64,000 nt of DNA from Mobula hypostoma (lineage: Eukaryota). The DNA lies in assembly GCF_963921235.1 (NCBI RefSeq), contig NC_086101.1, positions 31,992,001 through 32,056,000 on the forward strand, in the 5' to 3' direction. Shown one piece after another: positions 34,721-60,908 of the stretch (the first letter of the stretch is position 1; each line of letters opens with the position of its first letter). Under the pieces are notes generated by a model. That model did no database searches. It was not told where the DNA came from and was given only the letters and a program-made list of their open reading frames with translations. The position numbers and the translations under genes were made by a program.

Positions 34721-34944
34721 CCAGGGAACCAGGGAACTGTTATTGTGTTGTTCTATGTAATAGGTTGAATTTAATCTGTTCATGAATTTAGAGACAAATT
34801 AATGAAAACCTGGAGCTCGCGATGGTCTGAAATAAACTGTTTGACGAATCGGCGCCTTCTCATCAACGAGACAAAGTGTCATGTTACTCTGAGCCGGCTA
34901 TAAATTGCGAGCTCGGCAGCGTTTGATCGGAGGGAGAGCAGAAC

Positions 34945-35023
34945 CGATCCTGTACGAAAAGATCTTCCCCGACAACTGGTGACGCGACAGATACCGTGTG
35001 CTCATTGGTTGTTGGAAAGTCCG
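34945..35023 (+). promoter_or_regulatory. MHC-type S-X1-X2-Y module with adjacent kappaB-like site
   Basis: CGATCCT (34945-51), 16 nt, CCCGACAACTGGTG (34968-81) overlapping TGACGCG, 19 nt, CTCATTGG (35001), then TGGAAAGTCCG (reverse CGGACTTTCC, 9/10 to GGGACTTTCC). CpG-rich context. Confidence 0.7.
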
Positions 35024-35398
35024 CGGTTAACGGAGCGTGGTGTGACACGTCAAGCATTGCCGTTAAACACAATAGATCTATTCAAAGTGTTAACGTCAAC
35101 AAAAGGGCAAAAGTTAAATGAAGGGCGGGAGTGGCAGCTCAGGGTGCAGAGCCATCAGCAGTGATGGGGGGCGGGGGGTCGGAGACGGCATTCCCTCGCT
35201 GACCTTCGTGGATGGAGACCCTGGGCCATCCCTTTGCTGAGGTATACCACACAGCAGACGTTCTTCTTGTAATTTCAAAACTAAACTTTATTCATAATAA
35301 AATATATAAGACATAGGAGCAGAATTAGACCATTCAGCCCATCGAGTCTGCTCCACCATTCTATCAAGGCTGATCCCAGATCCCACTCAACCCCCTAC

Positions 35399-35900
35399 CA
35401 GACATCCCACCCTGCAAAAACTCATTTCAGGGAGATGGCACCATCAATTTGCGGGAGACTCCCGAAACTTCTGGGAGAGGTGGGATGTCTGCAATAGAGT
35501 AGCTCCTTAGCAGCTAGCCAGCTAGTTTAAATAACGTTAGCTATGCTAATGAACGAATGACACCTGTTAAACTCACCTCAACATGTCATTTACAGTCTTA
35601 ACCCACCATGGGCAATAGAAAAGTCACTGTTGCAAGCAGTGCAGCGAGCAACACTGTCATTATTTTTGACCCCTATTAGGCAGGGGTACACTTTAGTGTA
35701 GTCTGGGGTGACGTACGTTTTATATTTTCTTTTTTTGGAACACTCTGCCATGGCGCGCACGCTCTCTCTCTCTCTCTCTCGCGTGCTCTCGCTCTCAAAA
35801 AAATTGATTTCCGTGATATTGTATATAATTTGCAGGCATCAGGGAGCCACTCTTAATATGCGGAAGACTCCCGGAACTTCCAGGAGAGGTGGGATGTCTG
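35399..35900. mobile_element. MITE-like element inside a CR1 3' fragment
   Basis: Inverted ends CAGACATCCCACC / GGTGGGATGTCTG. The right end is also repeated internally at ~35445-35491. Confidence 0.6.
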
Positions 35901-36759
35901 CCATACACCTGCCTTCTCGCCATATCCTTTGATACCTTGACCAATCAGAAAATGCTCAACTTCCGCCTTAAATATAGGCAAGGATGGCCTCCACCACAGT
36001 CAGTGGCAGATCATTCCACAGATTTACTACTCTCTGGCTAAAAAAAAAATCCCTCCTTACCTCTGTTTTAAAAGGTTGTCCCTCAGTGTTGAGGCTGTGC
36101 CCTCTAGTTCTAAATACCTCCCCACTGTAGGAATCATCCTCTCCACATCCACCCTATCTTGTCCTTTCAATATTTGGTAGGTTTCAATGAGACCCCCCCC
36201 ACCCCGCCCCGCATTCTTCTCAATTCCAGTGAGTACAGGCCCAAAGCTGTCAAATGCTCCTCATAAGTTAACCCCTTCATTCCCAGAATCATCCTCGTGA
36301 ATCTTCTCTGGACTCTCTTCAATCATAACACATCCTTTCAGAGATATGGGGCCCAAAACTGTTGACAATACTCCAAGTGCGGCCTGACTAAAGTGTAAAC
36401 TAAGTGTAAACATTTTACATTCTACATCATGTCAATACATTCTGTAATGTTAACTTATTAGAAATACATAGCATCCTCGGCCTTCATACAACCCCAGCTC
36501 TGATACACAATTTCAGTGTTTGAGGTCAGTACAATTATAGATGAAATTTGAATTAGGAAATTTAAAATAATGAGGAAGTTAGTGATTGCTGCAAAAAGTT
36601 TATAGAATTGCATCACATAATCATTGAGTATGTGGTAAATAAAACATTGCTATTACAAATTCTGCAGTCGAGTATCCCACATTTGGGGACATCCAGCGGT
36701 CATCAGGCCCGGAGGGGAATGGGATAACATCCTCCTGAGCTTTTTCTATTTCAAAAAAA

Positions 36760-37650
36760 AACTTTATTCATAACAAAACATGCATAATAATGAGAAACTG
36801 CAGAACTTTTACATCTATAGGAAGAGGTACAGTCGACGTTTTGGGCCGAGACCCTTCGTCAGGACTAACTGAAAGAAGAAATAGTAAGAGATTTGAAAGT
36901 GGGAGGGGGAGGGGGAGATCCAAAATGATAGGAGAAGACAGGAGGGGGAGGGATGGAGTTAAGAGCTGGAAAGTTGATTGGTAAGGGATACGAGAGGATC
37001 ATGGAACGGGAGGCCTAGGGAGAAAGAAAGGGTGAGGGGGGAAGCCCAGAGGATGGGCAAGGAGTATAGTGAGAGGGACAGAGGGAGAAAAAGGAGAGAG
37101 AGAAAAAGAATGTGTGTATATAAATAAATAACGGGTGGGGTACGAAGGGGAGGTGGGGCATTAACGGAAGTTAGAGAAGTCAATGTTCATGCCATCAGGT
37201 TGGAGGCTACCCAGACGGAATATAAGGTGTTGTTCCTCCAACCTGAGTGTGGCTTCATCTTTGCAGTAGAGGAGGCCGTGGATAGACATATCAGAATGGG
37301 AATGGGACGTGGAATTAAAATGTGTGGCCACTGGGAGATCCTGCTTTCTCTGGCGGACAGAGCATCGGTGTTCAGCAAAACGATCTCTCAGTCTGCGTCG
37401 GGTCTCGCCAATATACAGAAGGCCGCATTGGGAGCACCGGACGCAGTATATCACCCCAGTCGACTCACAGGTGAAGTGTCGCCTCACCTGGAAGGACTGT
37501 CTGGGGGCCTGAATGGTGGTGAGGGAGGAAGTGTAAGGGCATGTGTAGCACTTGTTCCACTTACAAGTATAAGTGCCGGGAGGGAGATTAGTGGGAAGGG
37601 ATGGCGGGATGGGGGAACGAATGGACAAGGGAGTTGCGTAGGTTCAGGAA
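36760..37650 (-). mobile_element. Penelope-like element 3' part with intact GIY-YIG endonuclease ORF fragment
   Basis: ORF 37161..37628: HFTCESTGVIYCVRCSQCGLLYIGETRRRLRDRFAEH...EQHLIFRLGSLQPDGMN. Confidence 0.93.
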
Positions 37651-37839
37651 CAGTGAGTGAGAGGGAGAGGGAGACTGTCACACAGGAACCTACGTTCGGG
37701 AATAGTGAGGGAGAGGGAGACCGTCACACACAGACACCTTCCTTCGGCAGCAGCAAGCAAGAGGCTGGTGGACGCCGAAGAACACTCGCTCGCCCTCCGC
37801 ACCCTCCTCAGTGATTTCAATCTTCCTCAGCACTTTAAA

Positions 37840-39232
37840 AGATAGTAGAGGTAGTCCGGGTAATTATAGACCAGTGAGCCTTGCGTCTGTGGTGGGAAAG
37901 CTGTTGGAAAAGATTCTTAGAGATAGGATCTATGGGCATATAGAGAATCAAGGTCTGATCAGGGACAGTCAGCATGGCTTTGTGAAGGGCAGATCGTGTC
38001 TAACAAGCCTGATAGAGTTCTTTGAGGAGGTGACCAGGCATATAGATGAGGGTAGTGCAGTGGATGTGATCTATATGGATTTTAGTAAGGTGTTTGACAA
38101 GGTTCCACATGGTAGGCTTATTCAGAAAGTTAGAAGGCATGGGATCCAGGGAAGTTTGGCCAGGTGGATTCAGAATTGGCTTGCCTGCAGAAGGCAGAGG
38201 GTGGTGGTGGAGGGAGTACATTCAGATTGGAGGGTTGTGACTAGTGGTGTCCCACAAGGATCTGTTCTGGGACCTCTACTTTTCGTGATTTTTATTAACA
38301 ACCTGGATGTGGGGGTAGAAGGGTAGGTTGGCAAGTTTGCAGATGACACAAAGGTTGGTGGTACTGTAGATATTGTAGAGGATTGTCAAAGATTGCAGAG
38401 AGAGATTGATAGGATGCAGAAGTGGGCTGAGAAGTGGCAGATGGATTTCAACCCAGAGAAGTGTGAGGTGGTACACTTTGGAAGGACAAACTCCAAGGCA
38501 GAGTACAAAGTAAATGGCAGGATACTTGGTAGTGGGGAGGAGCCGAGGGATCTGGGGGTACATGTCCACAAATCCCTGAAAGTTGCCTGACAGGTAGATA
38601 GGGTAGTTAAGAAAGCTTATGGGGTGTTAGCTTTCATATGTCGAGGGATAGAGTTTAAGAGTCGCAAGGTAATGATGCAGCTCTATAAAACTCTGGTTAG
38701 GCCATACTTGGAGTATTGTGTCCAGTTCTGGTCGCCTCACTATAGGAAGGATGTGGAAGCATTGGAAAGTGTACAGAGGAGATTTACCAGGATGCTGCCT
38801 GGTTTAGAGAGTATGCATTATGATCAGAGATTAAGGGAGCTAGGGCTTTGCTCTTTGGAGAGGAGGATGAGAGGAGACATGATAGAAGTATACAAGATAT
38901 TAAGAGGAATTGATAGACTGGATAGCCAGCATCTCTTCCCCAGGGCACCACTGCTCAGTACAAGAGGACATGGCTTTAAGGTAAGGGGTGGGAAGTTCAA
39001 GGGGGATATTAGAGGAAGGTTTTTTACTCAGAGAGTGGTTGGTGCGTGGAATGCATTGCCTGAGTCAGTGGTGGAGGCAGATACACTAGTGAAATTTAAG
39101 AGACTACTAGACAGGTATATGGAGGAATTTAAGGTGGGGGGCTATATGGGAGGCAGGGTTTAAGGGTCAGCACTGTATTGTGGGCCGAAGGGCCTGTACT
39201 GTGCTGTACTATTCTATGTTTTATGTTCTATA
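37840..39232 (+). mobile_element. CR1 LINE 3' part (RT and tail)
   Basis: [57 protein letters not shown]; tail CTATGTT repeats. Confidence 0.95.
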
Positions 39233-41249
39233 TTCTATGTTAATCGGCGAGATCAGTGAGAAATGGATTAAATCTCGGGCTTGTGCCCGATCTCCAGGCT
39301 TCTTGGCCTCAAGCCTGCGCACCTGATGGAAACCCTGGGAGACAGCAAGCAGCAGATCGCTCAGCCAGCCTGGAATCAGACTGTAGATCTCAGGCTCCAA
39401 TAGCAGCAGAGCCATATTTGAAAGAAAAAGAAGTGAAATAAGTCGTTTTGTGAACCATCTGGCAGACGTCGGCCTTGGTCGCGTTGTTCTCAGCCACCAT
39501 CTTGTTCTGGTGGTAACAACTGGACATCTGTGGTCCTTCAGGGGCATAGAACATTGGCAGGGGGTGGGGTAACCAGGGGAAGAGCAGAGGCTTACTGGGG
39601 ACCAAAGCAGCAACCTGTGAGTGAGGCCTGAAATGCATACCTGTCACCTGTAGTCATCAGAAGGACAGTGGATCAGGAGAGTTCAGAAAAAGTGGACAGT
39701 GAAATTCCAAAACACGTTATTAAAAAGGTCAAGTTTAATTGTTATTCAACCATACTCATAAATACAGCCAAACGAAACAGTATTCCCCTGGGGCCAAGTG
39801 TAAAACACAGTAGCATCAGTTTCACAGACACTGCACATATAGCACATACCATAATGATAGCAGAAAAATGTACAGTCACAAAAATACTACGAAAAAATAA
39901 AAATATAGCCCAAGTCCCTGAGCGTCACAGCCTGTAGAATGGTGGTGCATGGATGTTATCCTGGAGCCATGTTTCTGGAAGAACGAGCTCACAGCAGTTC
40001 CTCATCTTGCACAGTGCAGCCATGGACGAATGCAATCCAGCTTGTCTTCCACTGAGCGAACACTGGAGGGCAGCACCCATGGGAGGGGCCCAACCCAGTA
40101 AGGAAAGCTGCTGCTCACAGCCAGCTCTGGTGTGCCCCTCCCCGACGGCCGCAACAGGCCACCCTGAGGCATGAGGTCATTGTCCGTGCAGCAACCGAGA
40201 CAATGCAGCCCCCCCCCACCTCACTGTCGGTCGTGGGAATGAAGCAGTGAATCGGACTCACAGTACTCTACATTTAAGAAGGAAATATTGGACGTTTCCA
40301 TTTTATAGACAAGTGGATTAAATCCCCAGGAGGTCTCAGGGATCCTGACAGAGAGCTGGACACAGGTGGTTCCAGATAGCTGGAGGACTGCAAATATGGT
40401 TTCTTTACTCAAGGGCAGCTAGGAAGGGTCAGGTAATGGGTAACTATAAACCAGCGAGCTAGTGTTAGAGTTAGCAAGATTTTAAGCAAATATTTCTGAT
40501 GGACAGGACGTGTCTTCAATTGGAAAGGTAGGGTTAAATCCTTGGATCCTTGACTTTCTGACCAACAGCACCCAATCAATAAGGATAGGCAGCCGCACCT
40601 CCACCACAATTGCCCGCCAGTGTTCGCTCAGTGGGATAGAAGCTCCTGAGGCTGGTGATGTGCTTTCAGACTTTTGTTTCCTCTGCCAGATGTGAGGTGG
40701 GGAAGAAAGAATGCCCGGGCTGGGTGGGGTGTTTGATTATATTGGCTACTGTAGTGAGACAGATAGAGCCCATGGAGGGGCCTCTCCACTACTATCCACA
40801 ACTCTGCAGTTTCTTGTGTTCACATGCAGTGCAGTTGGCATGCATTAAGCTTCCATCCAGACAGAAAGCTTTCAATGGAGCATCGATAAAAGCTGGTAAG
40901 GGTTGATGGGGACGTGCCAGATTTTCTTCAGACCTGTTACGAAGTAGGGGCATTGGTGAGCTTTCTGAAGCATGACATCAATGTGGTTGGATCAGGGCAG
41001 GCTATTGGTGATGTTCACACCCAGGAACTTGAAGCTGTCAACCATCTCAACCTCAGGACCATCGATGTGGACAGGAGCACGCGGGTTGCTCCCCTTCCCA
41101 ACGTCACTGACCAGCACTTTTGTTTTGCTGATGTTGAGGGTAATGTTGCTGTGATAATTACAGTGTCATTAAGCTCTGTATCTCCTCCTGTACTCCAGCT
41201 CGAATCCATTCTCCTGCCTTCTCCACGTAACTTTTGATGTCCGGACAAA

Positions 41250-44200
41250 TCAAGAACCTATCAGCCTTACTTTAAATATACCCAGTGACTTGCCTCCACA
41301 GCTGTTTGTCGCAACAAGTTCCACAGATTCACTACCCTCTTGATAAAAAAAAAAATCATGTGTTCTAAATGGATGTCCCTCCATTCTGAGGCTGTGTCCT
41401 CTGGTCCTAGACTACCCCACCATATGAAACATCCTCTCCACATCCCCTCTAACTTGGCCTTTCCATATTCAATAGGTTTCAAAGAGATTCCCCCCTTATT
41501 CTTCTAAACTCTAGTGCATGCAGGCCCAGAGCCAACAAATGCTCCTCATACGTCAACCCTTTCAGTTCCAGATTCATTCTCATGAACCTCCTCTGGAACC
41601 TCTCCAATGCCAGCACGTCTTTTCACAAAACTGCTCACAATACTCCAAGTGTGGTCTTATTGAATGGCAGTGCAGGCTTGATGGGCCAGACGGCCTACTC
41701 CTGCTCCTATTTCTTATGTTATCACCAATGCCTTAAAAAGCCTCAATGTTATATTTTTGCTCTTATGTTCTAGTCCTCTCAAAATGAATGCCAAAATGGA
41801 GACAATGTTTCCTTTGGTGGGGGTATCCGGAACTAGAGGGCACAGCCTCAAAACTGAGGGGCGACCATTTAGAACAGGAGGAATATTTTTAGCCAGAGTG
41901 GTGAATCTGTGGAATGCTCTGCACAGACTGCAGTGGAGGCCAAGTCCCTGGGTAAAACTGGGCTGAGAAGTGGCAGATGGAGTTCAACCCAGATAAGTGT
42001 GAAGTGGTTCATTTTGGTAAGTCAAGTATCATGGCAGAATAGAGTATTAATGGTAAGACTCTTGGCAGTGCAGAGGATCAGAGGGATCTTGGGATCTGAG
42101 TCCATAGGACACTCAAAGCTACTGCGCAGGTGGACTCTGTGATTAAGAAGGCATACAGTGTATTGGCCTTCATCAATCGTGGGATTGAGTTTAGGAGCTG
42201 AGAGGTAATGTTGCAGCTATATAGGACCCTGGTCAGACCCCACTTGGAGTACTGTGCTCAGTTCTGGTCACCTCACTACAGGAAGGATGTGGAAACCATA
42301 GAAAGGGTGCAGAGGAGATTTACAAGGATGTTGCCTGGATTGGGGAGCATGTCTTATGAGAATAGGCTGAGTGAACTCGGCCTTTTCTCCTCGGAGCGAC
42401 AGAGGATGAGAGGTGACCTGATAGAGGTGTATAAGATGATGAGAGGCATTGATCGTGTGGATAGTCAGAGGCTTTTTCCCAGGGCTGAAATGGTTGCCAC
42501 AAGAGGACACAGGTTTAAGGTGCTGGCGAGTAGGTACAGAGGAGATGTCAGGGGTAAGTTTGTTTGTTTTTTAAAAAAAAATGCAGAGTGGTGTGTGCGT
42601 GGAATGGGCTGCCGGCAACAGTATTGGAGGTAGATACGATAGGGTCTTTTAAGAGACTTTTGGATAGGTACATGGAGCTTAGAAAAATAGATGGCTATGG
42701 GTAAGCCTAGTAATTTTTAAGGTAGGGACATGTTCGGCACAACTTTGTGGGCCGAAGATCCTGTATTTTGCTGTAGGTTTTGTATGTTTCTATGTATATT
42801 TAAAGTGGGAGTTAATCGTTTCTTGATTGGTCGGGGCATCAAGGGATATGGTGAGAGGGCAGATATATGGGGATGAATGGGATCCAGGATCAGCCGTGAT
42901 GAAATGGCAGAGCGGACTCAATGGGCTGAATGGCCTAATTCTGCTCCTGTGTCTTACTAATACAAGAACGTAAGAAATAGGAGCAGGGGTAGGCCATCTA
43001 GCCCATTAAGCCTGCTCCATCATTCAATAAGATCTGGCCATAGACTCACCTCCATCTACCTGCCTTATTATTCCCCATACTAATTCCTCTACTATGCAAA
43101 AATTTATCCAGCCTTGTCTTAAATATATTTACTGAGGTAGCCTCCACAACTTCATTGGGCAGAGAATTCCACAGCTTCACCACTTTCTGGGAAAAGCAGT
43201 TCCTCCTCATCTCAATCCTAAATCTACTCCCGAATCTTGAGGCTATGTCCCCTAGTTCTGTTCTCACCTACCAGTGGAAACAACTTTCCCACATCTATCT
43301 TATCTATCCCTTTCATAATTTTATATGTTTCTATAAGATTTCCTCTCATTCTTCTGAATTCCAGCAAGTACAGTCCCAGGTGACTCAATCTCTCCTCACA
43401 GTTGAGCCCCCTCATCTCTGGAATCAACCTGGTGAACCTTCTCTGCACCGCCTCCAAAGCTAGTATATCCTTTCTAAAGTAAGGAGACCAGAACTACATG
43501 CAGTGCTCCAGGTGCAGCCTCACCAGTACCCTGTACAGTTCCAGTACAACCCTCCTGCTCTTAAATTCAATTTCTCTAGCAATGAAGGCCAACATTCCAT
43601 TTGCCTTCTTGATAGCCTGCTGCACCTGCAAACCAACCTTTAGTGATTCATGCACAAGCTCTCCCAAGTCCCTCTGCACAGCAGTATGCCGCAATCTTTT
43701 ACCATTTAAATAATTGCTCTCTCATTTTTCCTTCCGATGTGAATGACCCCCCCCCATTTACCAACATTGTGTTCCATCTGCCAGACCCTTGCCCACTCAC
43801 TTAACCTATCTATACCTCTCTGCACATTCTGTATCTTCTGTACAATTTGCTTTTCCACTCAATTTAGTGTCACCAGCAAACTTAGATACACTACACTCGG
43901 TCCCCCCTTACAGATCATTAATGTACATCATGAACAACTGTGGGCCCAGCACTGACCTCTGCAGCACACTGCTCACCACTGACCGCCAGCCAGAGAAACA
44001 CCCATGTATCCCAACACTCTGCTTCCAATCCTCTATCCATGCTAATACATCACCCCCAACTCTATGCATCCTTATCTTATGAATGTCTTTTATGTGGCAC
44101 CCTATTGAATGCCTTTTGGAAATCCAAGTAAATAATGTCCATCTGTTCCCCTCCATCCACTGCACTTGTTATATCCTCAAAGTGCTCCAGTAAGTTTGTC

Positions 44201-47097
44201 AAATAGGAGGTGAATCCACACTGGTCTGCCTGATGGATCCATTTCTTTCCAGATGCCTCGCTATTTCTTCTTTAATGATAGCTTCAACCACGGCTGTTAA
44301 ACTAACTGGCCTACAGCTACCTACCTTTTGCCTACATCCTTTTTTGAACAGTGGTGTGACATTTGCCTTCTTCCGATCTGCCGGGACCCACCCAGAGTCC
44401 AGAGAATTTTAGTAAATTATCACCAAAACCTCTACTATAACTTTGCAAATTCTCTCAGTACCCTGGGATGTACTCCATCAGGACCAGGGGACTTGTCTAT
44501 CTTCAGGCCCATAGGGTTGCTCAGCCCAACTCTTTAGTGATAGCTATTATATCAAGGTCCTCACCTCCCATTGCAGCCATATCATCTCCCTTTGACATGT
44601 TAGACGTGTCCTCCACCAGGAAGACTGACACAAAATAGTCATTCAAAGCCTCGGCCATTTCCTCATTACCCAATATCAATTCCCCCTTCTCGTCCTCCAA
44701 GGGAACTCCATTCACTTCAGCCACTCTTTTCCACTTTATATAATTATAAAAACTTTTACTATCTTTTTTAATATTTTGTGCCAGTTTATTTTCATAATCT
44801 ATCTTCCCTTTCTTTATTGCTCACTTAGTGATTCTTTGTTGCTTTTTAAAATTTTCCTAACCTTCCAGATTCCCACGAAACTTGGTGACTTTGTACGCAC
44901 GAGCTTTTAGTTTGATGCCTTCCTTTATTTTCTTAGTTATCCATGGCTGGCTCTCCCCACCCTTACTGTCCTTGCTTTTAACTGGAATATACTTTTGTTG
45001 AGCACCATGAAAAATCTCTTTGAAAATCTTCCACTGTTCCTCAACTGTCCCACCATATAGCTTGTCTTCCTAGTCTACCCTATCCAACTCCTCCTTCATC
45101 CCGTTGTAGTCTCCCTTGTTTAGGCATAATACATGTGGTCTTATGGTCTTTTTCACTTGCCTTCCTTACCAATGACTCAAGCTACACATTAACTTTTAAG
45201 GAATCCTACTCAAGGTATCCCAAGTCCATTTCCACTCTGATTCTTGAATTTTCTCCCCATTTAGAAAATAGTCTACAATTTTACTCCTTCTACCAAAATG
45301 TAGACCACACACTTCCCTGCACTATGTTCTGTCTGCCACTTCTTTACCCATTCTCCTAATCTACATACTTCTGCAGACTCTTCCTTCCCTCAACACTACC
45401 TGCCCCTCCACCTATCTTCATACTACCTGCAAACTTGGCCTGAAAGCCATCATTTCTGTTATCCAAATCATTGACATACTGTATAACGTGAAAAGGAGCA
45501 GTCCCAAGACCAACCCCTGTAGAACACCTATAGTCATCGGCAGCCAACCAGAAAAGGCACGCCTTTAATCCTTTCCCTTTAATTCTGCCAGTCAGCCAAT
45601 TTTCTAACCGGGCTTGTACCTCCCCTGCATTACCATGGGCTCTTATCTTGTTAAGCAGTCTGATGTGCGACACCTTGTCAAATCTCTTCTGAAAATCCAA
45701 GTAAGCCACATCCACTGACCCTCCCTTGTCTATCTTGTCTGTTGTTTCCTCATAGAATTACAACAGGTTTGTCAGGCAAGATTTCCCCTTAAGGAAACCA
45801 TGTTGACTTCTGCCTATTTTATCATGTTCCTCCGAATACTCCAGGATATCATCCTTGATAATGGACTCCATCATCTTTCCAATCTTCTGCCTTCCTCTTT
45901 TCTTAAACAGTGGAGAGATATTTGCAGTTTTCCAGACCTCCAGAACCATTCCAGAATCTAGAGATTCCTGAAGGATCACTACTAATGATTCCACAATCAT
46001 GAGCTACTTCTTTCAGAACCCTGGGGTGTAGTCCATCTGTTACAGGTGACCTATCTACTTTAAGACTGCTCAGCTTCTCAAGCACCTTCTCCTTAGTAAT
46101 AGCAACCACACTCACCTCTGCCCTCAGCATTCTTGGATTTTTGGCATACTGCTAGTGTTTTCCATAGTGAAAACAGACACAAAATATATCTTATGCTGAT
46201 CAGCCATTTCTTTGTTGCCCAGTACTACCTCTCCAGCATCATTATTCAGCAGTCTGATATCCACTCTCACCTCACTTTTACATTTTATATATCTGAAAAA
46301 AACTTTTGGTAATGTCTTTTATGTTATTAGCGAGCTTACCTTTATATTTAATCTCTTTCCTCCTTGTAGCTTTCTTAGCTGGCTTCTGTTGGTTTTTAAA
46401 AGCTTCCCAATCCTCCAACTTCCCAATAATATTTGCTTTATTATATACCTTCTCATTTGCCTTTATGCTGCTTTTGACTCCCCTTGTCAGACATGATTGT
46501 TCATCCTCCCTTTAGAATACTTCATCTTTGGGATATATCTACCCTGAACCTTGCAAATTGCCCCCAGAAATTCCAGCCATTGCTGTTCTACCATCATCCC
46601 TGCTTGTGTCCCCTTCCTCTCAACTTTGGCCAGCTCCTCTCTCATACCTTTGCATTTCTTTACACCACTTCATCTGAATTTAGCTTCTCTCTCAAACCAT
46701 TCCCGCACCAACAGGCACAGGAAGAGCTTCTTCCCTGAGGCTGTGACCCTGCTGAACCTCCCATCACAGCGCTAAGCAGTATTGCACCCATATTGTACTG
46801 TCTCAGTACTTCTATATTTGTGTGCTGTAGTACTTACTTTTTATTTGCAGTTATTTTGTAAACAACACTATTCTTTGCATTTCTGGTTAGTTGCTAACTG
46901 CATTTCATTGGCTTTGTATCTGTACTCAGCACAGTGACAAAGTTGAATCTAATCTAAAAATTGTAGGGTGAATTCTGTCATATTATGATCACAGCCTTCT
47001 GAGAGTTCCTTTCTCTTAAGCTTTATAATTGAATTTGGTTCATTACACAGCACCCAATTCAGGATTGTCTTTCCCATGGTGAGGTCAACCACAAGAT
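41250..47097. mobile_element. Stack of nested CR1 fragments on both strands
   Basis: ORFs 42208..42633 (+), 43224..43457, 43494..43694, 43908..44165, 45356..45715 and 45758..46000 (-) all carry CR1 RT or C-terminal motifs. Confidence 0.88.
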
Positions 47098-50420: not shown

Positions 50421-52082
50421 TATACAATTTCAACATAACATCCCAAATCCTGTATCAGAATATTGATTTATGACCCTATCTACCTGTGACGCCACTTTCA
50501 AGGAATTATGGATCTATATTCTGAGATTCCCTCTGTTCTACCACACTCCTCAGTGTCCTACTGCTCACCAAGTAAGACCTACCCTGGTTTGTCCTCCCAA
50601 AGTGCAACATCTCACAACTGTCTGCATTAAATTCCACCTGCCACTTTTCAGCTCAGTTTTCCAGCTGGTCCAGATCCCACTGCAAGCCATGATAGTCTTC
50701 CTCACTGTCCACACCTAATCTTGGTGTCATCCACAAATTTGCTGATCTAGTTTACAACATTATCATCCAGATCATTGATACAGATGACAAACAACAATGG
50801 ATGCAGCACCAACAAGTGAAAATCTGCAGCTGCTGGAAATCCGAGCAACACACACAAAATGCTGGAGGAACTCAGCAGGCCCGGCAGCACCTATGGAAAA
50901 AAGAGTACCGTCGACATTTCGGGCTGAGACCTTTCATCTTTTTTCCATAGATGCTGCCTGGCTTGTTGAGTTCTTCCAGCATCTGGTGTGTGTCGCATGG
51001 ACACAGCACCATTCTCTGTGGCACTCCACTAGGGATCACTGCTCTTCTCACTGCTATCGTCAGGAAGAAGGTACAGGAGCCTCAGGATCCACACCACCAG
51101 GTTCAGAAACAGTTACTACCCAACAAACATCAGGCTCTTGTACCAGAGGGGATAACTATACTCAACTTCACTCACCCTATGACTGAACTGTTCCCACAAC
51201 CTACAACCTGTGGACTTACTTTCAAGGACTCTTCATATCATGTTCTTAATTATTGCTTGCTTGTATACTATTATTTATTATTTCCTTTTTTCTTTCTTCT
51301 GTTGTCTTGTACATGGGTTATTTGTCTGACTTTCTGGGTGTGGTCTTTCATCAACTCCATTGTCTTGTATTGATTGTGACTGCCTGCAAGAAGATGAATC
51401 TCGGGGTTGTATATGGTGACATTTGATATTAAATCCACTTTGAAATTTGAGGATCTAGAGTTTGGTGATGGGTTTGCTTGGAATTATAGTACAGTGGATT
51501 CAGTTTAATCAGGCTATCGGATAATTCAGGGCAGCTACTTCAAAAGTTCAAAGCTCAAAGCAAACTTATTATTAAAGTATGTATATGTCACCATATACAA
51601 CCCTGAGATTCATTTTCTTGCAGGCATACTCAATAAGTCCAATAACCGTAAAAGAATCAATGGAAGGCAGCACCAACAGGGTAGCCAACCAGTGTGCAAA
51701 AGACAACAATCTGTGCAAATACAGAAAGAAAGAAAAATAATAAATAAATAAACAAGCAATAAATGTCAAGAACATGAGATGAAGACTCCTTGAAAGTGAG
51801 TCCATAGGTTGTGTGAACAGTTCATTGATGGGGCAAGTGAAGTTGAGTGAAGTTATCCCCTCTGGTTCATGAGCTGAGGGGTAACAACTGTTTCTGAACC
51901 TGGTGATGTGGATCCTGAGGCTCCTGTACCTTATTCCTGATGGCAGCCATGAGAAGAGAGAATGGCCTGGAAGGCGGGGGTCCCTGATGATGGATGCTGC
52001 TTTCCTGCAACAACACTCTGTGTAGATATGCTCATGACAGACTGGGCCGTAACCACTACCTCTTGTGGGATTTTCCATTCAA

Positions 52083-54765
52083 GGGCATTGTTGTTTCCAC
52101 AGTGAGCTGTGATGTAGCCAGTCAATGTACATTCCATCACACACCTATAGAAGTTTTTCAAAGATTTAGATGTCATGCCAAATCTTTGCAAGCTCCTAAA
52201 CATTTCATTTGGGACAACTCTCAAAGAACAAACTGAAATTGAGAAAATAGCCAGAATTCAATATACAACACACATAAAAGTTGCTGGTGAACGCAGCAGG
52301 CCAGGCAGCATCTCCAGGAAGAGGTCCAGTTGACGTTTCGGGCCAAGACCCTTCGTCAGGACTAACTGAAAGAAGAGCTAGTAAGAGATTTGAAAGTGGT
52401 GGGGGGCGGGCGGGATCCGAAGATTCAATGTGTTTATTTAGGACACAATGTCACTTACTTGGGGCAGGAGACTGTTTCCAAACAGTCTCACTAATCTCAG
52501 TCGTGTAGTCGTTAGACACTACACTGTGCTTACAGCGATCAGTTTTTAAATAGTCTCAGTTGCATATGTTTGTGTTCAAAAAGCAGTGATTTTTGTCACT
52601 GATAGCTGACAAAAAATAAGCAGTAGGAGAATTTGGAACCGTTTTGCTCACTGCAGTTTCAAGCATTCAGGCTTGGTAATGCCAGAAAAGGCTGGGAGTG
52701 AAAATGAAATGATTGCACTACTGCAACAAGTTAGGAATTACAGAAGTATGGACAATCATCTTGAATATTCAATGAAAGTGAAGATTTAGAGAATGCAATG
52801 GTCTAAAGTATTGAATGAAGACAATCCATTATCTGCACTAGATAGATAGATAAATAAATAAATAGATACTTTATTGATCCCAAAGGAAATTACAATGTCA
52901 CAGTAGCATTACAAGTGCACACATATGCAAATATTAGAAGGGAAATAAGAAAGAATTTTAAAAAGTTATTTAAAAAAAGATGTACAAGATTTACAAGTCA
53001 AAGGTTACAAGATTATCCAGATTTCCAAGTTCACACTGATCAGTTGGCACTGCAAGAATTACCATAATATTATACAGTAATGGTGCACATTCACACTGTC
53101 CAGATAAGAAGTGATGGTAGTATTGCACAGAATTGTGCAGGGTGTCCGCAATAGTGGGGTGTAGTAAACATAGATAAACAGAGCTCTGGTAAAAGAAGAT
53201 AACAACTTCCCTGGCAATAGGCTGACTCATCATAGAGCCTAATGGCCGAGGGTAAGAATTACTCTTTGGAGCGGCAGTTGTCTTAGTCTATGACTGAAAG
53301 TGCTCCTCTGTTCATCCAGGCTGGCATACAGAGGGTGAGAAACATTGTCCAGAATTACCAGAATTTTCTGGGGGTCCTTTGTTGTATCTCAGTCTCTGGT
53401 GTGTCCAGTTTGACTCCTATAACAGAGCCAGCCTCTCTAATCATTTTACTGAGCCTATTGACATCACCCCTGTTGATGCCATTACCCGAGCACACCATCA
53501 CATACAAGATACTGGTGACAACAGGCTGCTGGAACGTGTGAAGAAGAGGCCTGCATACTCCAAAGGACCTCAGTCTCCTCAGGAAGTAGAGGTGGCTCTG
53601 GCCCTTCCTGTACACAGACTCACTAGGTGCTGTGCTGATTGTGTTCATTTACAGTCTTGCCTTGTCTTGTCTTGTCCATATTGCACAGTCAAAAGACCAT
53701 GGCCGATAAATTCCTCCACTGATAGCTATTAGGAACTAGTACACAGATTGATAGTACTGTAGAGTTATTGGTAGTGTTCTAATTTGTTCTGTTTTGCATT
53801 TAAATGCACAAATTGATACTCAGTTAAATGGTAGCTTCTCTTTTTTTATGCCTTTTGACTATCTCCATGGAATGTCGGCTAATCGGACAGCTGTTTGATT
53901 GGGCCAAGATGTACTGGTCCCCACGTGTCCCAATTAACTGGAACCTACCGTATTGCAGTCAGTGAACAATAGTCTGCCGTTGGTGCTTTCTCTGTCCAGG
54001 TGCTCCAGGGATGAGTGCAGGGCTGGGGATGTGACATCTGCCAAAGACCCTTTTCGGCATGCAGCAATTACAGTGGGTCTAGTTTGTCTGGGAGGCTGGA
54101 GTTAATAAGCGCCATGAATAGCCTCTTGAAGCACTTCAGGATGGTGGAAAGCAGAGACATGTCATTACTTACATTACTTATTATTTCTTAGATACAGGAA
54201 TGTTAGTGGTCAGTCAGAGTCTGTTTCCCGGGGTGGAAGGTCAAACATTAGAAGGCACAGGTTTAAAGTGAGAGAGGCAAAGTTTAAAGGAGATTTGTGG
54301 GCCGGTTGTTTTTCCACAGAAAGTGGTGGATCCCCGAATGTGCTGCCAGAGAGGCAAATACGACAGAGGCATCGGACAGACTCGTAAACAGGCAGGGAGT
54401 GGAGGGACACGGAACATGCGGGCAGGTGGAATTAGCTGGATCCCATTATGGAGGACACAGACGTGCTGGGCCGAAGTCTCTCCTGGGGCCATTCGGGTAA
54501 TCAGCCGCTGAAAGTTGTTCCCCGTGCCTGGTTCTTGGTACTGTGTCCCCGTTTCTGGGTAGCACCCATAGGTGCTCTCCGCAGCAAACTGCAAATTCGG
54601 GATCTACCCGACAACAAGTGACGCTGAGCGCTGCCCTCGCTGATTGGCTGGAGGCAGCCGCTGTTTTTGGGGAACTATTGTCCAGTTTCAAAGCCTGGGA
54701 AACCCCCCCCCCCAACCCCTTTCCGAGACTCGGGGTGTCACCCTGCCGTACTTTTTGAGGGATTT
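52083..54765 (+). repeat. Tandem segmental duplication, unit A
   Basis: Colinear similarity with 54776-60740, e.g. GGGCATTGTTGTTTCCACAG vs GGTCATTGTTGTTTCCACAG, CAGTGATTTTTGTCACTGA, AAAAGACCATGGCCGATAAATTCC and the terminal CpG segment. Confidence 0.9.
54607..54649 (+). promoter_or_regulatory. Duplicated X1-X2-Y module (unit A copy)
   Basis: CCCGACAACAAGTG, 19 nt, CTGATTGGCT. X and Y are identical to the 60606 copy. Confidence 0.7.
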
Positions 54766-55102
54766 TCTGTTCAAGGTCATTGTTGTTTCCACAGCTGGTT
54801 GTGACGCCGCCAGTCAATATACCTTCCACCACACGTATAGAAGTTTTGTCACAGTTTTCCATGTCATACCGAAACTTCGCAAACTCTTAAACATTTCATT
54901 TGGAACAACTCTTAAAGAACAGAATTAAATTGAGAAAATAACCAGAATTCATTATGTTTATTTAGAACAGAATGCCATTTAACTGGGGCACGAGACTGTT
55001 TCCGAATCTTTTCCAACTAGCCTCAGTCGTGTGCACTGCGTGGGCGTTAGGACATTACACTCCGCTTAGCACTATCAGTTTTTAAATAGCGTCAGTTGTA
55101 CA

Positions 55103-57398
55103 CAGTACCTATAAAAAGTATTCACTGACTTGGAAGTTATCATGTTTTATTGTTTTAAAACATTGAATCACAGTGGATTTAATTTGGCTTTTTGACACTG
55201 GTTAACAGAAAAAAATATTCCTTCCTGTCAAAGCGAAAATAGATCCCTACAAAGTGATCTAAATTAATTACAAATATAAAACACAAAATAATTGATTACA
55301 TAAATATTCACCCCTTTCAAGTCAGTATTTTTTAGATGTACCTTTGTCAGCAATTACAGCCTTGAGTCTGTGTGGATAGGTCTCTGTCAGCTTCGCACAT
55401 CTGGACACTACAATTTTTTTTCCCATTCTTCTTTACAAAACTGCTCAAACTCTGTCAGATTGCGTGGGGATCGTGAGTGACAGCCCTTTTCAAGTCCAAC
55501 CACAAATGTTCAATTGGATTGAGGTCTGGACTCCGACTTGACTGCTCCAGGACATTAACTTTGTTGCTTTTAAGCCATTCCTGTGTAGCTTTGACTTTAT
55601 GCTTGGGGTCATTGTCTTGCCGGAAAACAGATCTTCTCCCAAGTCACAGTTCTCTTGCAGACTGCATCAGGTTTTCCTCCAGGATTTCCCTGTATTTTGT
55701 TGCATTCATTTTACCCTCTACCTTCACAACCCTTCCAGGGCCTGCTGCAGTGAAGCATCCCCACAGCATGATACAGCCACCACCAAGTTTCACAGTAGGG
55801 ATGGTGTGTTTTTGATGATGTGTGGTGTTTAGCTTACGCCAAATATACCTTTTAGTCTGATGGCCAAAAAGCTCAATTTTGGTTTTCATTGGACAATAGA
55901 ACCTTCTTCCAGCTGACTTCAGAGTCTCCCACATGCCTTCTGGCAAACTCTAGCCAAGATTTCAAGTAGGTTTTTTTCAACAATGGCTTTCTCTTTGCCA
56001 CTCTCCCATAAAACTGTGACTGGTGAAGTACCTAGGCAACAGTTGTCTGTGCATTCTCTTCCATCTCAGTCACTGAAGCTTGTAACTCCTCCAGGGGTGT
56101 CATAGGTCTCTTGGTGGCCTCCCTCACTAGTCCCCTTCTTGCATGGTCACTCAGTTTTTAAGGATGGCCTGCTCTGGGCAGATTTACAGCAGTGCCATAT
56201 TCTTCCCATTTCTTGATGATTGCCTTAATTGTACTCCGAGGAATATTCAGTGACTTGAACATTTCCTTGTATCCATCTCCTGACTTGTGCTTTACAATAA
56301 CATAGAAACATAGAAAATAGGTGCAGGAGTAGGCCATTCGGCCCTTCGAGCCTGCACTGCCATTTATTATGATCATGGCTGATCATCCAACTCAGAACCC
56401 CGCCCCAGCCTTCCCTCCATACCCCCTGACCCCCATAGCCACAAGGGCCATATCTAACTCCCTCTTAAATATAGCCAATGAACTGGCCTCAACAGTTTCC
56501 TGTGGCAGAGAATTCCACAGATTCACCACTCTCTGTGTGAAGAAGTTTTTCCTAATCTCGGTCCTAAAAGGCTTCCCCTCTATCCTCAAACTGTGGCCCC
56601 TCGTTCTGGACTTCCCCAACATCAGGAACAATTTTCCTGCATCTAGCCTGTCCAATCCCTTTAGGATCTTATACGTTTCAATCAGATCCCCCCTCAATCT
56701 TCTAAATTCCAACGAGTACAAGCCCAGTTCATCCAGTCTTTCTTCATATGAAAGTCCTGCCATCCCAGGAATCAATCTGGTGAACCTTCTTTGTACTCCC
56801 TCTATGGCAAGGATGTCTTTCCTCAGATTAGGGGACCAAAACTGCACACAATACTCCAGGTGTGGTCTCACCAAGGCCTTGTACAACTGCAGTAGTACCT
56901 CCCTGCTCCTGAACTCGAATCCTCTCGCTATAAATGCCAGCATACCATTCGCCTTTTTCACCGCCTGCTGTACCTGCATGCCCTTTTTCACAGAGCTGCT
57001 TGGAGTGTTCTTTTGTCTTCATGGTGTAGTTTTTGCCAGGATACTGACTCACCAGCAGTTGGACCTTCCGGATATATTTTTACTACAATCAATTGAAACT
57101 CCTTGACTGCACATAAGTGATCTCCATTTCGTTAATTATGTGATTTCTAAAACCAATTGGCTGCACCAGTGATGTGTCATTATATGAATACTTATGCAAT
57201 CAATTATTTTGTGTTTTGTACTTGTAATTAACTTAGATCACTTTGTAGAAACCTGTTTTCATCTTGACACAAAAGAATCTCTTTCTGTTGTTCATTGTCA
57301 AAAAAATTCAAAATTAAATCCTTGTGATTCAATCTTGTAAAACAATAAAACATAAAAACTTCCAGGGAGGGGGGAATGGATACTTCTTATAGGCGCTG
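55103..57398 (-). mobile_element. Degenerate Tc1/mariner transposon
   Basis: TIRs CAGTACCTATAAAAAGTATTCAC and the reverse complement CAGCGCCTATAAGAAGTATCCAT, followed by TA. Minus ORFs: SLNIPRSTIKAIIKKWEEYG (HTH) and TVKLGGGCIMLWGCF...EGKMNATKYREIL (DDE region). Confidence 0.93.
56299..56981 (-). mobile_element. CR1 3' fragment nested in the Tc1 transposase
   Basis: ORF 56392..56991 contains LVRPHLEYCVQFWSP; CATAGAAA tail. Confidence 0.92.
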
Positions 57399-58464
57399 TA
57401 TGTTTAAATAGCAGTGATTTTTGTCACTGACAGATGGCAAGAAATAAGCAGTAGGAGAATTCAGAACTGTTTTGCTCACTGCAGTTTCAAACATTCAGAA
57501 TGGAGGTGCCAGAAAAGGCCAAGGATGCAAATTAAAAGAAATTAAGAATTACAAAAGTATGGACAATCATATTGAAAGTTCAATAAAAATGAAGATTTAG
57601 AGAATGCAATGGTCTAAAGCATTGAATGAACACACTCCATTATCTGCACTAGATAGATAGATAAGACACTTTATTGATCACAAAGGAAATTACAATGTCA
57701 TAGTTGCATTACAAGTGCGCATATACAAATATTAGAAGAGAAGTAGCAAAGAATAAAAAAGTTATTTTGAGAATAAAGTGTACAAGATTTACAAGTGAAA
57801 GATTACAAGATTATCCAGATTTCCAAGTTCACACTGATCAGCTGGTAGTTCAAGAATTACCATTATATTATACAGTAATGGGTGCACATTCACACCGTCC
57901 AGATAGGAAGTGATGGTAGTATTCCACAGGGTGTTTGCAATAGCAGGATGTGGTAAACAGAACTTAAACAGAGGTTAATAACAGTCTTGCAGGAGGAGTC
58001 TTTCTTCACTTCCCCAGCTACAGGTTGACTCATTATAGATCCTCATGGTCGAGGGTAAGAATGACCTCATGTAGCAGCACAGTTGTCTTTGCCTGTTACT
58101 GAAAGTGCTCCTCTGTTCAGCCAAGGTGGCATGCAGAGGGTGAGAAACATTGTCCAGCATTGTCAGGATTTTCCATAGGGTCCTTTGTTCTACCACAGCC
58201 TCCAGAGTGTCCAGTTTGACTCCTATAACAGAGCCAGCCTGTCTAATCTGTTTATTCAGCCTGTTGGCCTCACCCGTGTTGATGCCATTAACCCAGCACA
58301 CAATGGCATACAAGATTGTATTGGTGACAACAGGCTGCTGGAACATTTGAAGGAGAGGCCTTCATACTCCGAAGGACCTCTGTCTCCTCAGGAAGTAGAG
58401 GAAGCTCTGGCCCTTCTTGTACACAGACTCACTTGGTGCTGTACTAATTTTGTTCATTTACAGC

Positions 58465-59510
58465 AATAGAACATAGAACATGGAAATCTACAGCACATTA
58501 CGGGCTCTTTGGCCCACAATGTTGTGCTGACCATGTAACCTACTCTAGAGACTGCCTAGAATTTCCCTACCACATAGCCCTCTAGTTTTCTAAACTCCAT
58601 ATATCTATCTAAGAGGCTCTTAAAAGACCCTATTGTATCCGCTTCCACCACTGCCACCGGCAGAACATTCCACGCACTCACCACTCTCTGAGTGAAAAAC
58701 TCACCCCTGATATCCCTTCTGTACCTACTTCCTAGTACCTTAAAACTATACCCCCTCATGTTAGCTATTTCAGCCCTGGGGAAAAAGCCTCTGGCTATCC
58801 ACCCGTTCAATGCCTCTCATCATCTTACACACCTCTGTCAGGTCACCTCTCATCCTCCATCGCTCCAAGGAGAAAAGGACAGGTACACTTAACCTATTCT
58901 CATAAGGTACACCCTCCAATCCAGGCAACATCCTTGTAAATCTCCTCTGCACCCTTTCTATAGTTTCCACATCCTCCGTGTAGTGAGGTGACCAGAACTG
59001 AGCACAGTACTCCAAGTGGGGTCTAACTAAGGTCTTATATAGATGTAACATTACCTCATGGCTCTTGAACTCAGTCCTGCGGTTGATGAAGGCCAACACA
59101 CCGTACGCCTTCTCAACAACACTGTCAACCTGTGCAGCAGCTTTGAGTGTCCTATTGACATGGACCTCAAGATCTCTCAGATCCTCCACACTGCCAGGAG
59201 TCTTACCATTTATATTATATTCTGTCTTCAAATTGGACCTACCAAAATAAACCACTTCACACTTATCTGGGTTGAAGTCCAGCTGTCACCTCTCAGCCCA
59301 GTTCTGCATCCTATCATCTCGCTGTAACCTCTGACAGCCCTCCACACTATCCACAACACCTCCAACCTTTGTGTCATCAGTAAACTTACTAACCCACCCT
59401 TCTACTTCCTCATCCAGGTCATTTATAAAAATCACAAAGAAGAGGGGATCCAGAGCAGATTCCTGCAGAACACCACTGGTTACTGACCTCCAAGCAGAAT
59501 ACGAACCAAT
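58465..59510 (-). mobile_element. CR1 3' fragment present only in unit B
   Basis: ORFs 58556..58810, 58770..59255 and 59286..59546. Confidence 0.9.
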
Positions 59511-60605
59511 ATGAGCCAAAAGACCATGGCCGATAAATTCCTTCATTGATAACTATTAGGCACTAGTACACAAATTGATAGTACTGTAGAGTTATTGGTA
59601 GTGTCCTAATTTGTTCTGTTTTGCATTTAAATTCACAAATTGATACTCAGTTAAATGGTAGCTTGTCTTTTTTTTATACCTTTTAACTATCTCCATGAAA
59701 TGTCGGCTAATTGGGACAGCTGTTTAATTGGGCCAAGGTGTACTGGTCCCCACGTGTCCCAATTAACTGGAACCTACCGTATAGCAGTCAGTGAACAATA
59801 GTCTGACGTTGGTGCTTTCTCTGTCCAGGTGCTCCAGGGATGAGTGCCGGGCTGGGGATGTGACATCTGCCAAAGACCCTTTTCGGCATGCAGCAATTGC
59901 AGTGGGTCGAGTTTCTCTGGGAGGCTGGAGTTAATGAACGCTTTGACATGGCTCTTGAAGCACTTCAAGATAGTGAATGTCAAAGGCACTAGCTGTAGAC
60001 TTTATTACATTACTTGTTATTTCTCAGCTACAGGGATGTTAGTGGTCTTCTTAAAACAGTCCGGGGGCCTCAGATTGAAGTAGGGAGAGGTTAGAAATAT
60101 CTGCAAATGTGCAGGTAAGGGGGTGGAGAGGTGAAGGAAATGAAGAAGTAAGGAGGTGGCGAGTGGAGCGACAGAGAGGTGAGGGAAGGAGAGGGGTCAG
60201 ACAGTCAGAGTCTGTTTCCCGGGGTGAAAGGTCAAACACTAGAGGGCACAGGTTTAAAGTGCGAGAGACAAAGTTTAAAGGAGATATGTGGGCCGGTTGT
60301 TTTTCCACAGAAAGTGATGGGTCCCCGAATGTGCTGCCAGCGAGGCAAATAGGACAGAGGCATCGGACAGACTCGTGAACAGGCAGGGAGTGGAGGGATA
60401 CGGAACGTGCAGGCAGGTGGAATTAGATGGATCCCATTATGGAGGACACAGACATGCTGGGCCGAAGTCTCTCCAGGGGTCAATCGGGTAATCGGCCGCT
60501 GATAATTGTACCCCGTGCCCGGTCCCTGGCGCCACCTACAGGTGCTCCCCGTTTTGCGTGGCACCTGCAGGTGCTCTCCGCAGCAAAGTGCAGATTCGGG
60601 ATCTA

Positions 60606-60648
60606 CCCGACAACAAGTGACGCTGGGCGCTGCCCTCGCTGATTGGCT
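60606..60648 (+). promoter_or_regulatory. X1-X2-Y module upstream of the probable PSMB9 exon 1
   Basis: CCCGACAACAAGTG (TGACGC X2), 19 nt, CTGATTGGCT; lies in a CpG island. Confidence 0.75.
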
Positions 60649-60814
60649 GGAAGCAGCCGCAGTTTTGGGGGACTCTTGTCCAGTTTCAAAGCCTGGGAAC
60701 CCCTCAACCCCTTTCCGAGACTCGGGGTGTCATCCTGCCGTCCTGCTGTGGATCGGGATCAGGGTGGGGGTGTGTGGGGCGGTGCTCTGTACCCTCCTGT
60801 CCCGTTCCGGCTGT

Positions 60815-60832
60815 ACTTTCTGTTTCACTTCT
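60815..60832 (+). promoter_or_regulatory. ISRE / IRF element ACTTTCTGTTTCACTTCT
   Basis: The reverse strand reads AGAAGTGAAACAGAAAGT (tandem GAAA cores). It contains GTTTCACTTCT like the mouse class I ISRE, ~75 bp before the ATG. Confidence 0.75.
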
Positions 60833-60908
60833 GTGCCGGACACTGCCCCAGACGGCGGACGGGAGAGAGTAGACGGCCCACGGGAGAGAGTAGACGGCCC
60901 ACAGCGAG

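What the first reader, a model, noticed from the sequence alone, without database searches (positions are those of the whole stretch)
34945..60832. Candidate multi-module SXY control region for an elasmobranch class I / immunoproteasome cluster
Three same-orientation modules share CCCGACAAC-nn-GTGACGC and an exact 19-nt X-to-Y spacer (34968, 54607, 60606). Each sits in a CpG-rich island within otherwise CpG-poor repeat DNA. Mammalian class II loci use dispersed S-Y modules as long-range enhancers. An analogous array serving class I and PSMB9 in a cartilaginous fish would be a notable ancestral regulatory system. I cannot confirm from sequence whether this has been described. It is my best candidate for a new system in this window.
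Basis: partly seen in the sequence, partly recalled or inferred. Interest (0 to 1): 0.76.

Follow-up and report, generated by a model that had tools for sequence, protein, structure and literature searches.

The report
Ray PSMB9 promoter switch plus upstream copies
Three copies of the DNA docking site that turns on MHC-pathway genes lie upstream of a devil ray's immunoproteasome gene PSMB9: one is its ordinary promoter, one is a duplication by-product, and one is a gene-less element also kept in a skate, so it is probably a real far-off switch.

Summary
CCCGACAAC-NN-GTGACGC occurs three times on the + strand, against 0.02 expected. Each copy is followed 18 nt later by ATTGG. That makes each a full X1-X2(site alpha)-Y module.

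The three copies are not equivalent:
- **C (60606)** sits 303 bp upstream of the ATG of PSMB9 exon 1, confirmed against the Mobula hypostoma protein. Its X1-X2 core and an ISRE are conserved in two skates, so C is an ordinary proximal promoter.
- **B (54607)** is the upstream copy in a 2.6-kb tandem duplication of that promoter's flank. It lacks the ISRE and the exon and shows no sign of constraint.
- **A (34968)** is unrelated in its flanks. It lies in a 545-bp unique CpG island. It is orthologous to a roughly 400-bp element 6.4 kb upstream of PSMB9 in Amblyraja radiata, in the same orientation and with no gene behind it.

So A is a conserved orphan X-Y element, probably a distal enhancer or an unannotated promoter. 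The claim of a three-module array serving class I is not supported. The window holds only a lone class I alpha1 exon, and no module accompanies it.

This scan had already noted gene-less SXY modules elsewhere in this genome's MHC. Function remains untested. I rate this a new member of a known kind.

The parts
34968..35010 (+). Module A core: X1 CCCGACAAC (34968-34976), X2/site alpha GTGACGC(G) (34979-34986), Y box CTCATTGGTT (35001-35010)
   Evidence: The orthologous core is in Amblyraja at L003:3609.
34736..35134 (+). Conserved non-coding element around module A. It lies in a unique 545-bp island (34725-35270) with CpG o/e of about 1.2-1.3.
   Evidence: blastn against L003:3367-3760 gives E 4e-18. 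In an empirical null of 1922 windows, the best unrelated score is 19 against 51 here. The element is unique within the window.
35015..35024 (+). kappaB-like GGAAAGTCCG just 3' of the Y box of module A. It is not conserved in Amblyraja.
   Evidence: alignment gap in the skate.
54607..54649 (+). Module B core (X1, X2, Y), a copy of module C
   Evidence: It differs from C at 1 of 46 positions between X1 and Y.
52117..54749 (+). Tandem-duplication unit 1, which ends 140 bp 3' of B's X1. It carries no ISRE and no exon.
54809..60741 (+). Tandem-duplication unit 2, stretched by insertions at about 55098-57401, 58463-59514 and 60047-60202. It is 82-91% identical to unit 1.
60606..60648 (+). Module C core: X1 (60606-60614), GTGACGC (60617-60623), Y box CTGATTGGCT (60639-60648). 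This is the proximal PSMB9 promoter module.
   Evidence: The X1-X2 core is conserved 16/18 in the skate PSMB9 promoters.
60815..60832 (+). ISRE-like ACTTTCTGTTTCACTTCT, about 90 bp 5' of the ATG
   Evidence: It is conserved in Amblyraja, Rhinoraja and the zebra shark.
60909..60962 (+). PSMB9 exon 1 coding part (MQTTSGLIGGSTVPVTTG), with donor G|GTAGGT
   Evidence: It is 100% identical to the N-terminus of P0175, annotated as proteasome subunit beta type-9-like of Mobula hypostoma.
10469..10729 (-). Solitary MHC class I alpha1 exon, 24 kb from module A and pointing away from it
   Evidence: nurse shark 6LUP, E 9e-32. One search shows that no alpha2 or alpha3 lies in the window.
31228..34720 (.). 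52-bp minisatellite (67 copies) abutting the N gap at 31028-31227. It bounds the island of module A on the left.

Best explanation
The three motif copies are X1-X2-Y modules. In mammals such modules are bound by RFX, CREB/ATF and NF-Y and recruit NLRC5 or CIITA. All three lie in the 26 kb upstream of the immunoproteasome gene PSMB9 of Mobula hypostoma, and they have three different statuses.

C is the proximal promoter module of PSMB9. Together with an ISRE 210 bp further down, it most likely gives constitutive, enhanceosome-type and interferon-induced transcription. This parallels the mammalian TAP1/PSMB9 promoter.

B arose when a roughly 2.6-kb piece of the PSMB9 upstream flank was duplicated in tandem. 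It is a promoter fragment without an exon. It may add binding sites or do nothing.

A is an independent, ancient, gene-less X-Y element kept at the same relative place and orientation in a skate. It is most likely a distal enhancer of PSMB9, or less likely the promoter of an unannotated non-coding transcript.

Shown here: the motifs, the duplication, the PSMB9 identity, and the conservation of A and C. Inferred: factor binding, enhancer activity and the target gene.
For: - **Motif statistics:**
- **PSMB9 identity of exon 1:**. The 18 residues match the N-terminus of P0175, and the protein continues TTIMAVEF as in the proteasome beta-1i subunit.
- **C in skates:**. The core reads CCCGGCAAC-AA-GTGACGA at the same distance from the ATG. 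An ISRE and a GGCGGTGCYCTGTACCC block are also conserved.
- **B/C duplication:**
- **A orthology:**, with the Amblyraja core CCTAGCAACAGATGACGCG-18 nt-ATTGG. It is the only unique conserved sequence in the two upstream regions apart from the proximal promoter. No gene is called between it and PSMB9 in the skate.
- **No ORF with a Pfam family and no Rfam hit near A:**
- **Literature:** an SXY module with a shared NLRC5 peak at Tap1/Psmb9 in mouse (PMC4374748); TGACGC as the core of site alpha (PMC1971071); distal W/SXY and XL enhancers in the class II region (PMC7866136).
Against: - No binding, chromatin or transcript data exist for any of the three modules.
- An S box could not be identified with confidence.
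- The skate copy of A is not CpG-rich (o/e 0.34), so its state may differ between species.
- A was not found within 10 kb upstream of PSMB9 in Rhinoraja or the zebra shark. The zebra shark also lacks a recognisable X-Y at its PSMB9 promoter.
- The skates' proximal Y box is degenerate.
- Conservation of A rests on two species only.
Confidence: 0.62

Rival explanations
1. One reading: A, B and C together form a dispersed, long-range SXY control region, like a locus control region, that coordinates class I and PSMB9.
For: All three modules are co-oriented and complete. A is conserved and gene-less. Class II loci do use distal SXY and XL elements. Earlier notes of this scan report gene-less SXY modules elsewhere in this MHC; these are unchecked leads.
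Against: B and C are one duplication, and B shows no excess conservation (my estimate is P about 0.3 if only B is free to change). C is simply a proximal promoter. The only class I sequence in the window is a lone alpha1 exon without a module.
Confidence: 0.15
2. A is a promoter rather than an enhancer. It would drive an unannotated, probably non-coding transcript, or it is the stranded promoter of a gene lost from this position.
For: A has a strong CpG island in Mobula (o/e 1.2-1.3). Its X-to-Y orientation is promoter-like.
Against: There is no conserved ATG, ORF or splice donor behind it. No gene is called there in Amblyraja. The skate copy is CpG-poor. A dead promoter would not be expected to stay alignable between rays and skates when all surrounding DNA has turned over.
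Confidence: 0.2
3. The motif copies are chance matches or are carried by a repeat family, without regulatory meaning.
For: The window is very repeat-rich. Both B and C lie about 180 bp from a LINE 3' tail.
Against: Only 0.02 matches are expected by chance. The A island and the C promoter piece have no other copy in the window or in 182 kb of other elasmobranch loci, apart from their orthologues. Both are conserved across batoid orders.
Confidence: 0.03

Closest known systems
Mammalian SXY module of MHC class I pathway promoters, including the shared Tap1/Psmb9 promoter bound by NLRC5 (Ludigs et al. 2015, PMC4374748)
   Same: Module C has an X1 box, an X2/site alpha TGACGC core and an inverted CCAAT Y box at fixed spacing. 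It lies in front of PSMB9 and is combined with an ISRE.
   Different: TAP1 is not the divergent partner here. The X-Y lies about 245 bp 5' of the likely start site and upstream of the ISRE, whereas mammalian class I promoters place the ISRE 5' of the SXY. The S box is not recognisable, and binding of NLRC5 or RFX is untested.
Distal W/SXY (S'-Y') and X-box-like (XL) enhancers of the human MHC class II region (Krawczyk 2004; Gomez 2005; reviewed in PMC7866136)
   Same: Modules A and B are complete X-Y modules kilobases from any exon, in the same orientation as the nearby gene. A is conserved, as a functional element would be.
   Different: They lie in a class I / immunoproteasome region rather than class II. 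No RFX or CIITA occupancy, looping or enhancer assay exists. B is a recent by-product of duplication.
Teleost MHC class I promoters with W/S, site alpha/X2, enhancer B and ISRE (for example salmon UBA, PMC1971071)
   Same: The same motif vocabulary occurs in a non-mammalian vertebrate, including the TGACGC core.
   Different: Those are class I heavy-chain promoters. Here the gene is PSMB9, and the class I fragment in the window has no such module.

Membership tests
MHC SXY enhanceosome module | X1 box (RFX-type site, canonical CCTAGCAAC) | tested here: met
   CCCGACAAC occurs in A, B and C. The orthologues read CCTAGCAAC (Amblyraja distal) and CCCGGCAAC (skate proximal). This is a match at sequence level only.
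MHC SXY enhanceosome module | X2 box / site alpha (CRE-like, core TGACGC) 2-3 nt after X1 | tested here: met
   GTGACGC lies 2 nt after X1 in all three copies. The core definition comes from PMC1971071.
MHC SXY enhanceosome module | Y box (inverted CCAAT) at a constrained distance from X | tested here: met
   ATTGG lies 18 nt after GTGACGC in A, B and C and 19 nt in the Amblyraja distal copy. In the skates' proximal promoter it is degenerate, with a spacer 5 nt shorter.
MHC SXY enhanceosome module | S (W) box about 15-17 bp 5' of X1, the determinant of NLRC5 versus CIITA specificity | tested here: inconclusive
   A conserved GATCT lies directly 5' of X1 in all modules, and CCTGTAC lies 12 nt 5' of X1 in A and its orthologue. 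I had no tool-given S consensus to score against.
MHC SXY enhanceosome module | Occupancy by RFX5/RFXAP/RFXANK, CREB/ATF1, NF-Y and NLRC5 or CIITA | not testable with these tools
   This needs ChIP or CUT&Tag in ray or skate tissue.
MHC SXY enhanceosome module | Position in the proximal promoter of an antigen-presentation gene | tested here: met
   This is met for C only, which lies 303 bp 5' of the PSMB9 ATG. It is not met for A (26 kb away) or B (6.3 kb away).
Distal SXY/XL enhancers (class II type) | SXY- or X-like sequence remote from promoters within the MHC | tested here: met
   No exon, Pfam-bearing ORF or Rfam family lies near A or B.
Distal SXY/XL enhancers (class II type) | Evolutionary conservation as a non-coding element | tested here: met
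   A matches Amblyraja L003:3367-3760. B could not be tested because the Mobula birostris DNA was not retrievable.
Distal SXY/XL enhancers (class II type) | Enhancer activity and long-range contact with target promoters | not testable with these tools
   This needs reporter assays and Capture-C or 4C.

The most novel reading that the evidence does not exclude
Module A is a distal enhanceosome-type enhancer of the class I antigen-processing pathway, retained since the common ancestor of rays and skates. It would be the first class I-side counterpart of the class II distal SXY enhancers. In skates it may supply the canonical Y box that the proximal PSMB9 promoter has lost.
Probability: 0.3. Interest if true: 0.6.

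Novelty: new member of a known kind. Interest (0 to 1): 0.4.

Why it matters
In mammals, NLRC5 and the RFX/NF-Y enhanceosome control class I, B2M, TAP1 and PSMB9 through promoter SXY modules. Distal SXY elements are known only on the class II side.

This window shows that a cartilaginous fish has the same X-Y plus ISRE promoter logic at PSMB9. That places this wiring in the ancestor of rays and skates; the one shark examined lacks a recognisable X-Y there. In addition, a gene-less X-Y element has been preserved upstream of PSMB9 for the whole ray-skate divergence.

This yields a short, well-defined candidate sequence. It can be used to test whether long-range enhanceosome elements also act in the class I pathway.

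Tried and rejected
- **Module at the class I alpha1 exon:** none was found, with strict or loose patterns.
- **Other class I exons or a TAP gene in the window:** tblastn with five class I proteins found only alpha1. tblastx against three PSMB9 loci found only repeat-type hits.
- **Pfam on 20 long ORFs:** only LINE endonuclease and reverse-transcriptase families scored credibly; the rest were low-complexity noise.
- **Rfam on the whole window:** no match.
- **Class I loci of little skate and bamboo shark (L001, L002):** no module in their 10 kb upstream, although the gene models there look unreliable.
- **DNA for other PSMB9 loci:** not retrievable for Mobula birostris, Hypanus sabinus, Scyliorhinus torazame, Cetorhinus and Chiloscyllium plagiosum because the files were too large. 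The closest relatives therefore could not be compared.
- **Constraint on B:** no evidence. It shows 1 difference in 46 nt against about 10% background, which is not significant once C is assumed to be constrained.
- **Pol III-type or TATA-driven RNA gene at A:** rejected, because the TATAAA at 34898 is not conserved in the skate.
- **CTCF-like site in the conserved GGCGCC block, by eye:** poor match, dropped.
Full report
**1. Observation**

The pattern CCCGACAAC-NN-GTGACGC occurs exactly three times, at 34968 (A), 54607 (B) and 60606 (C). All three are on the + strand. With up to 2 mismatches allowed there are no further matches. Shuffled sequence gives a mean of 0.02 matches. Each copy is followed by ATTGG after exactly 18 nt.

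The parts read as follows:
- An X1 box of RFX type.
- An X2/site alpha box, whose core TGACGC is the one cited for class I promoters in PMC1971071.
- An inverted-CCAAT Y box.

CpG enrichment is strong at A (o/e 1.2-1.28), moderate at C (0.63-0.78) and weak at B (0.54-0.67). The window mean is 0.49.

**2. The window**

The window is mostly repeats. It holds five tandem arrays and many LINE fragments, plus an N gap at 31028-31227 that I left alone. I found only two gene pieces.

The first is a class I alpha1 exon on the minus strand at 10469-10729. It matches nurse shark class I (6LUP) at E 9e-32. No alpha2 or alpha3 exon lies in the 10.4 kb downstream of it inside the window. No X-Y module lies at its 5' side.

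The second is an 18-codon exon at 60909-60962 (MQTTSGLIGGSTVPVTTG) with the donor G|GTAGGT. I searched with the open frame around it, restricted to its first 40 residues. This returned one protein, P0175, annotated 'proteasome subunit beta type-9-like [Mobula hypostoma]', 217 aa. P0175 begins with exactly these 18 residues and continues TTIMAVEF. The genome is therefore the lesser devil ray, and the gene behind C is PSMB9.

**3. B and C are one event**

blastn and the repeat finder show a tandem duplication.
- Unit 1 is 52117-54749.
- Unit 2 is 54809-60741, stretched by three insertions.
- Identity between the units is 82-91%.

The right-hand breakpoint lies 140 bp 3' of X1. B therefore carries the X-Y module but neither the ISRE (60815-60832) nor exon 1.

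Between X1 and Y, B and C differ at 1 of 46 positions. The local background is about 10%. If C is constrained and only B is free to drift, this is not significant; my estimate is P about 0.3. B is intact but shows no evidence of selection.

**4. C is the proximal PSMB9 promoter, conserved in skates**

I fetched PSMB9 loci of Amblyraja radiata (L003), Rhinoraja longicauda (L004) and the zebra shark Stegostoma tigrinum (L005).

Both skates have CCCGGCAAC-AA-GTGACGA about 250 bp 5' of the ATG. That is 16 of 18 positions identical to C, in flanks that are otherwise about 55-60% identical. Two further blocks are conserved: GGCGGTGCYCTGTACCC and the ISRE CTTTCGGTTTCACT. The skates' Y box is degenerate (ATTTC or ATTTGG), with a spacer 5 nt shorter.

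The zebra shark keeps the ISRE. It has no recognisable X-Y within 10 kb upstream.

In mouse, Tap1 and Psmb9 share one NLRC5 peak over an SXY module (PMC4374748). C is therefore the ray member of a known promoter type. A conserved CCAGACGG about 59 nt 5' of the ATG may be the initiator; this is inference.

**5. A is independent and conserved**

The flanks of A do not align with those of B or C; only the motif is shared. A lies in 545 bp of unique sequence (34725-35270). This island is bounded by a 52-mer minisatellite on one side and repeat debris on the other.

blastn of this island against all fetched loci gives a single hit, L003:3367-3760 in Amblyraja (E 4e-18). The hit is 6.4 kb 5' of PSMB9 and in the same orientation. 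Its core reads CCTAGCAACAGATGACGCG, then 18 nt, then ATTGG.

In an empirical null of 1922 real 500-bp windows, the best unrelated local score is 19, against 51 for this hit. tblastx shows that everything else in the two upstream regions is multi-copy repeat.

The best-kept block is CCTGTAC...GATC-X1-X2-spacer-GTGCT-ATTGG-TGTT. A second conserved block, GGCGCCTT...GAGACAAA, lies about 100 nt further 5'. The following features are not conserved:
- the kappaB-like site at 35015;
- the TATAAA at 34898;
- any ATG behind the module.

No gene is called between the element and PSMB9 in the skate. Near A there are no Pfam-bearing ORFs and no Rfam family. The skate copy is CpG-poor (o/e 0.34).

The element was not found within 10 kb 5' of PSMB9 in Rhinoraja or the zebra shark. 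The two skates' upstream regions are not collinear beyond the proximal 450 bp, so absence in Rhinoraja is uninformative.

**6. Interpretation**

- C works as the PSMB9 promoter module. The sequence and its conservation are shown; factor binding is inferred from the mammalian enhanceosome.
- B is a duplication by-product.
- A is a conserved orphan X-Y element. It resembles the distal W/SXY and XL elements of the human class II region (PMC7866136), but it lies on the class I-pathway side.

Whether A is an enhancer of PSMB9 or the promoter of an unannotated transcript cannot be settled from sequence. I favour the enhancer reading, at roughly 0.45 against 0.2. My reasons are that no exon signal is conserved behind A, and that the skate, whose proximal Y box is lost, keeps a perfect module there.

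**7. Prior knowledge**

Full-text searches found no description of an elasmobranch PSMB9 promoter or of SXY modules in cartilaginous fish. Reviews state that SXY is conserved across vertebrates.

Earlier notes of this scan report other gene-less SXY modules in this genome's MHC, near class II genes and on another class I piece. I did not test those. They show only that the scan has met this phenomenon before on other DNA.

**8. Limits**

- Conservation of A rests on two species.
- The closest relatives' DNA could not be retrieved.
- The genome-wide frequency of the module could not be measured.
- The S box is unresolved.

Noticed in passing
window 34968-34976 and 60606-60614; L003:3609 and L003:9752: In Mobula, the non-homologous modules A and C share the X1 9-mer CCCGACAAC exactly. 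Their skate orthologues differ from it and from each other (CCTAGCAAC distal, CCCGGCAAC proximal). This could reflect co-evolution with the lineage's RFX, gene conversion or chance.
   Followed up: partly
L003:9752-9795, L004:9758-9800 versus L003:3609-3652: In skates, the proximal PSMB9 module has lost a canonical Y box and 5 nt of spacer, while the distal element carries a perfect X1-X2-Y. This suggests a division of labour between the two sites.
   Followed up: partly
window 60860-60901; L003:10001-10070; L004:10001-10075: A 21-nt tandem unit straddles the PSMB9 start. In skates, each unit holds an in-frame ATG, giving MQxxxRG repeated 3-4 times at the N-terminus (proteins of 238 aa). In Mobula, two units without an ATG lie in the 5' leader.
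   Followed up: no
window 10469-10729 (-): A class I alpha1 exon begins with the classical GSHSLRYF motif. It stands alone, with no alpha2 or alpha3 in the 10.4 kb 3' of it in the window. The only candidate leader (ATG near 10938) has a poor hydrophobic core. It is either a pseudogene fragment or a gene with a very long intron running off the window.
   Followed up: partly
window 12113-20744 and 22375-22873: An 8.6-kb satellite of a 42-bp unit (about 207 copies, 96% identical), with a second short array of the same unit 1.6 kb further on.
   Followed up: no
   Followed up: no
L005:1-37251: In the zebra shark locus, PSMB9 is followed 9 kb downstream by a second proteasome gene (274 aa, probably PSMB8) in the same orientation. 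A TAP-like (ABC_membrane) gene model spans the whole locus and is probably a mis-joined model.
   Followed up: no
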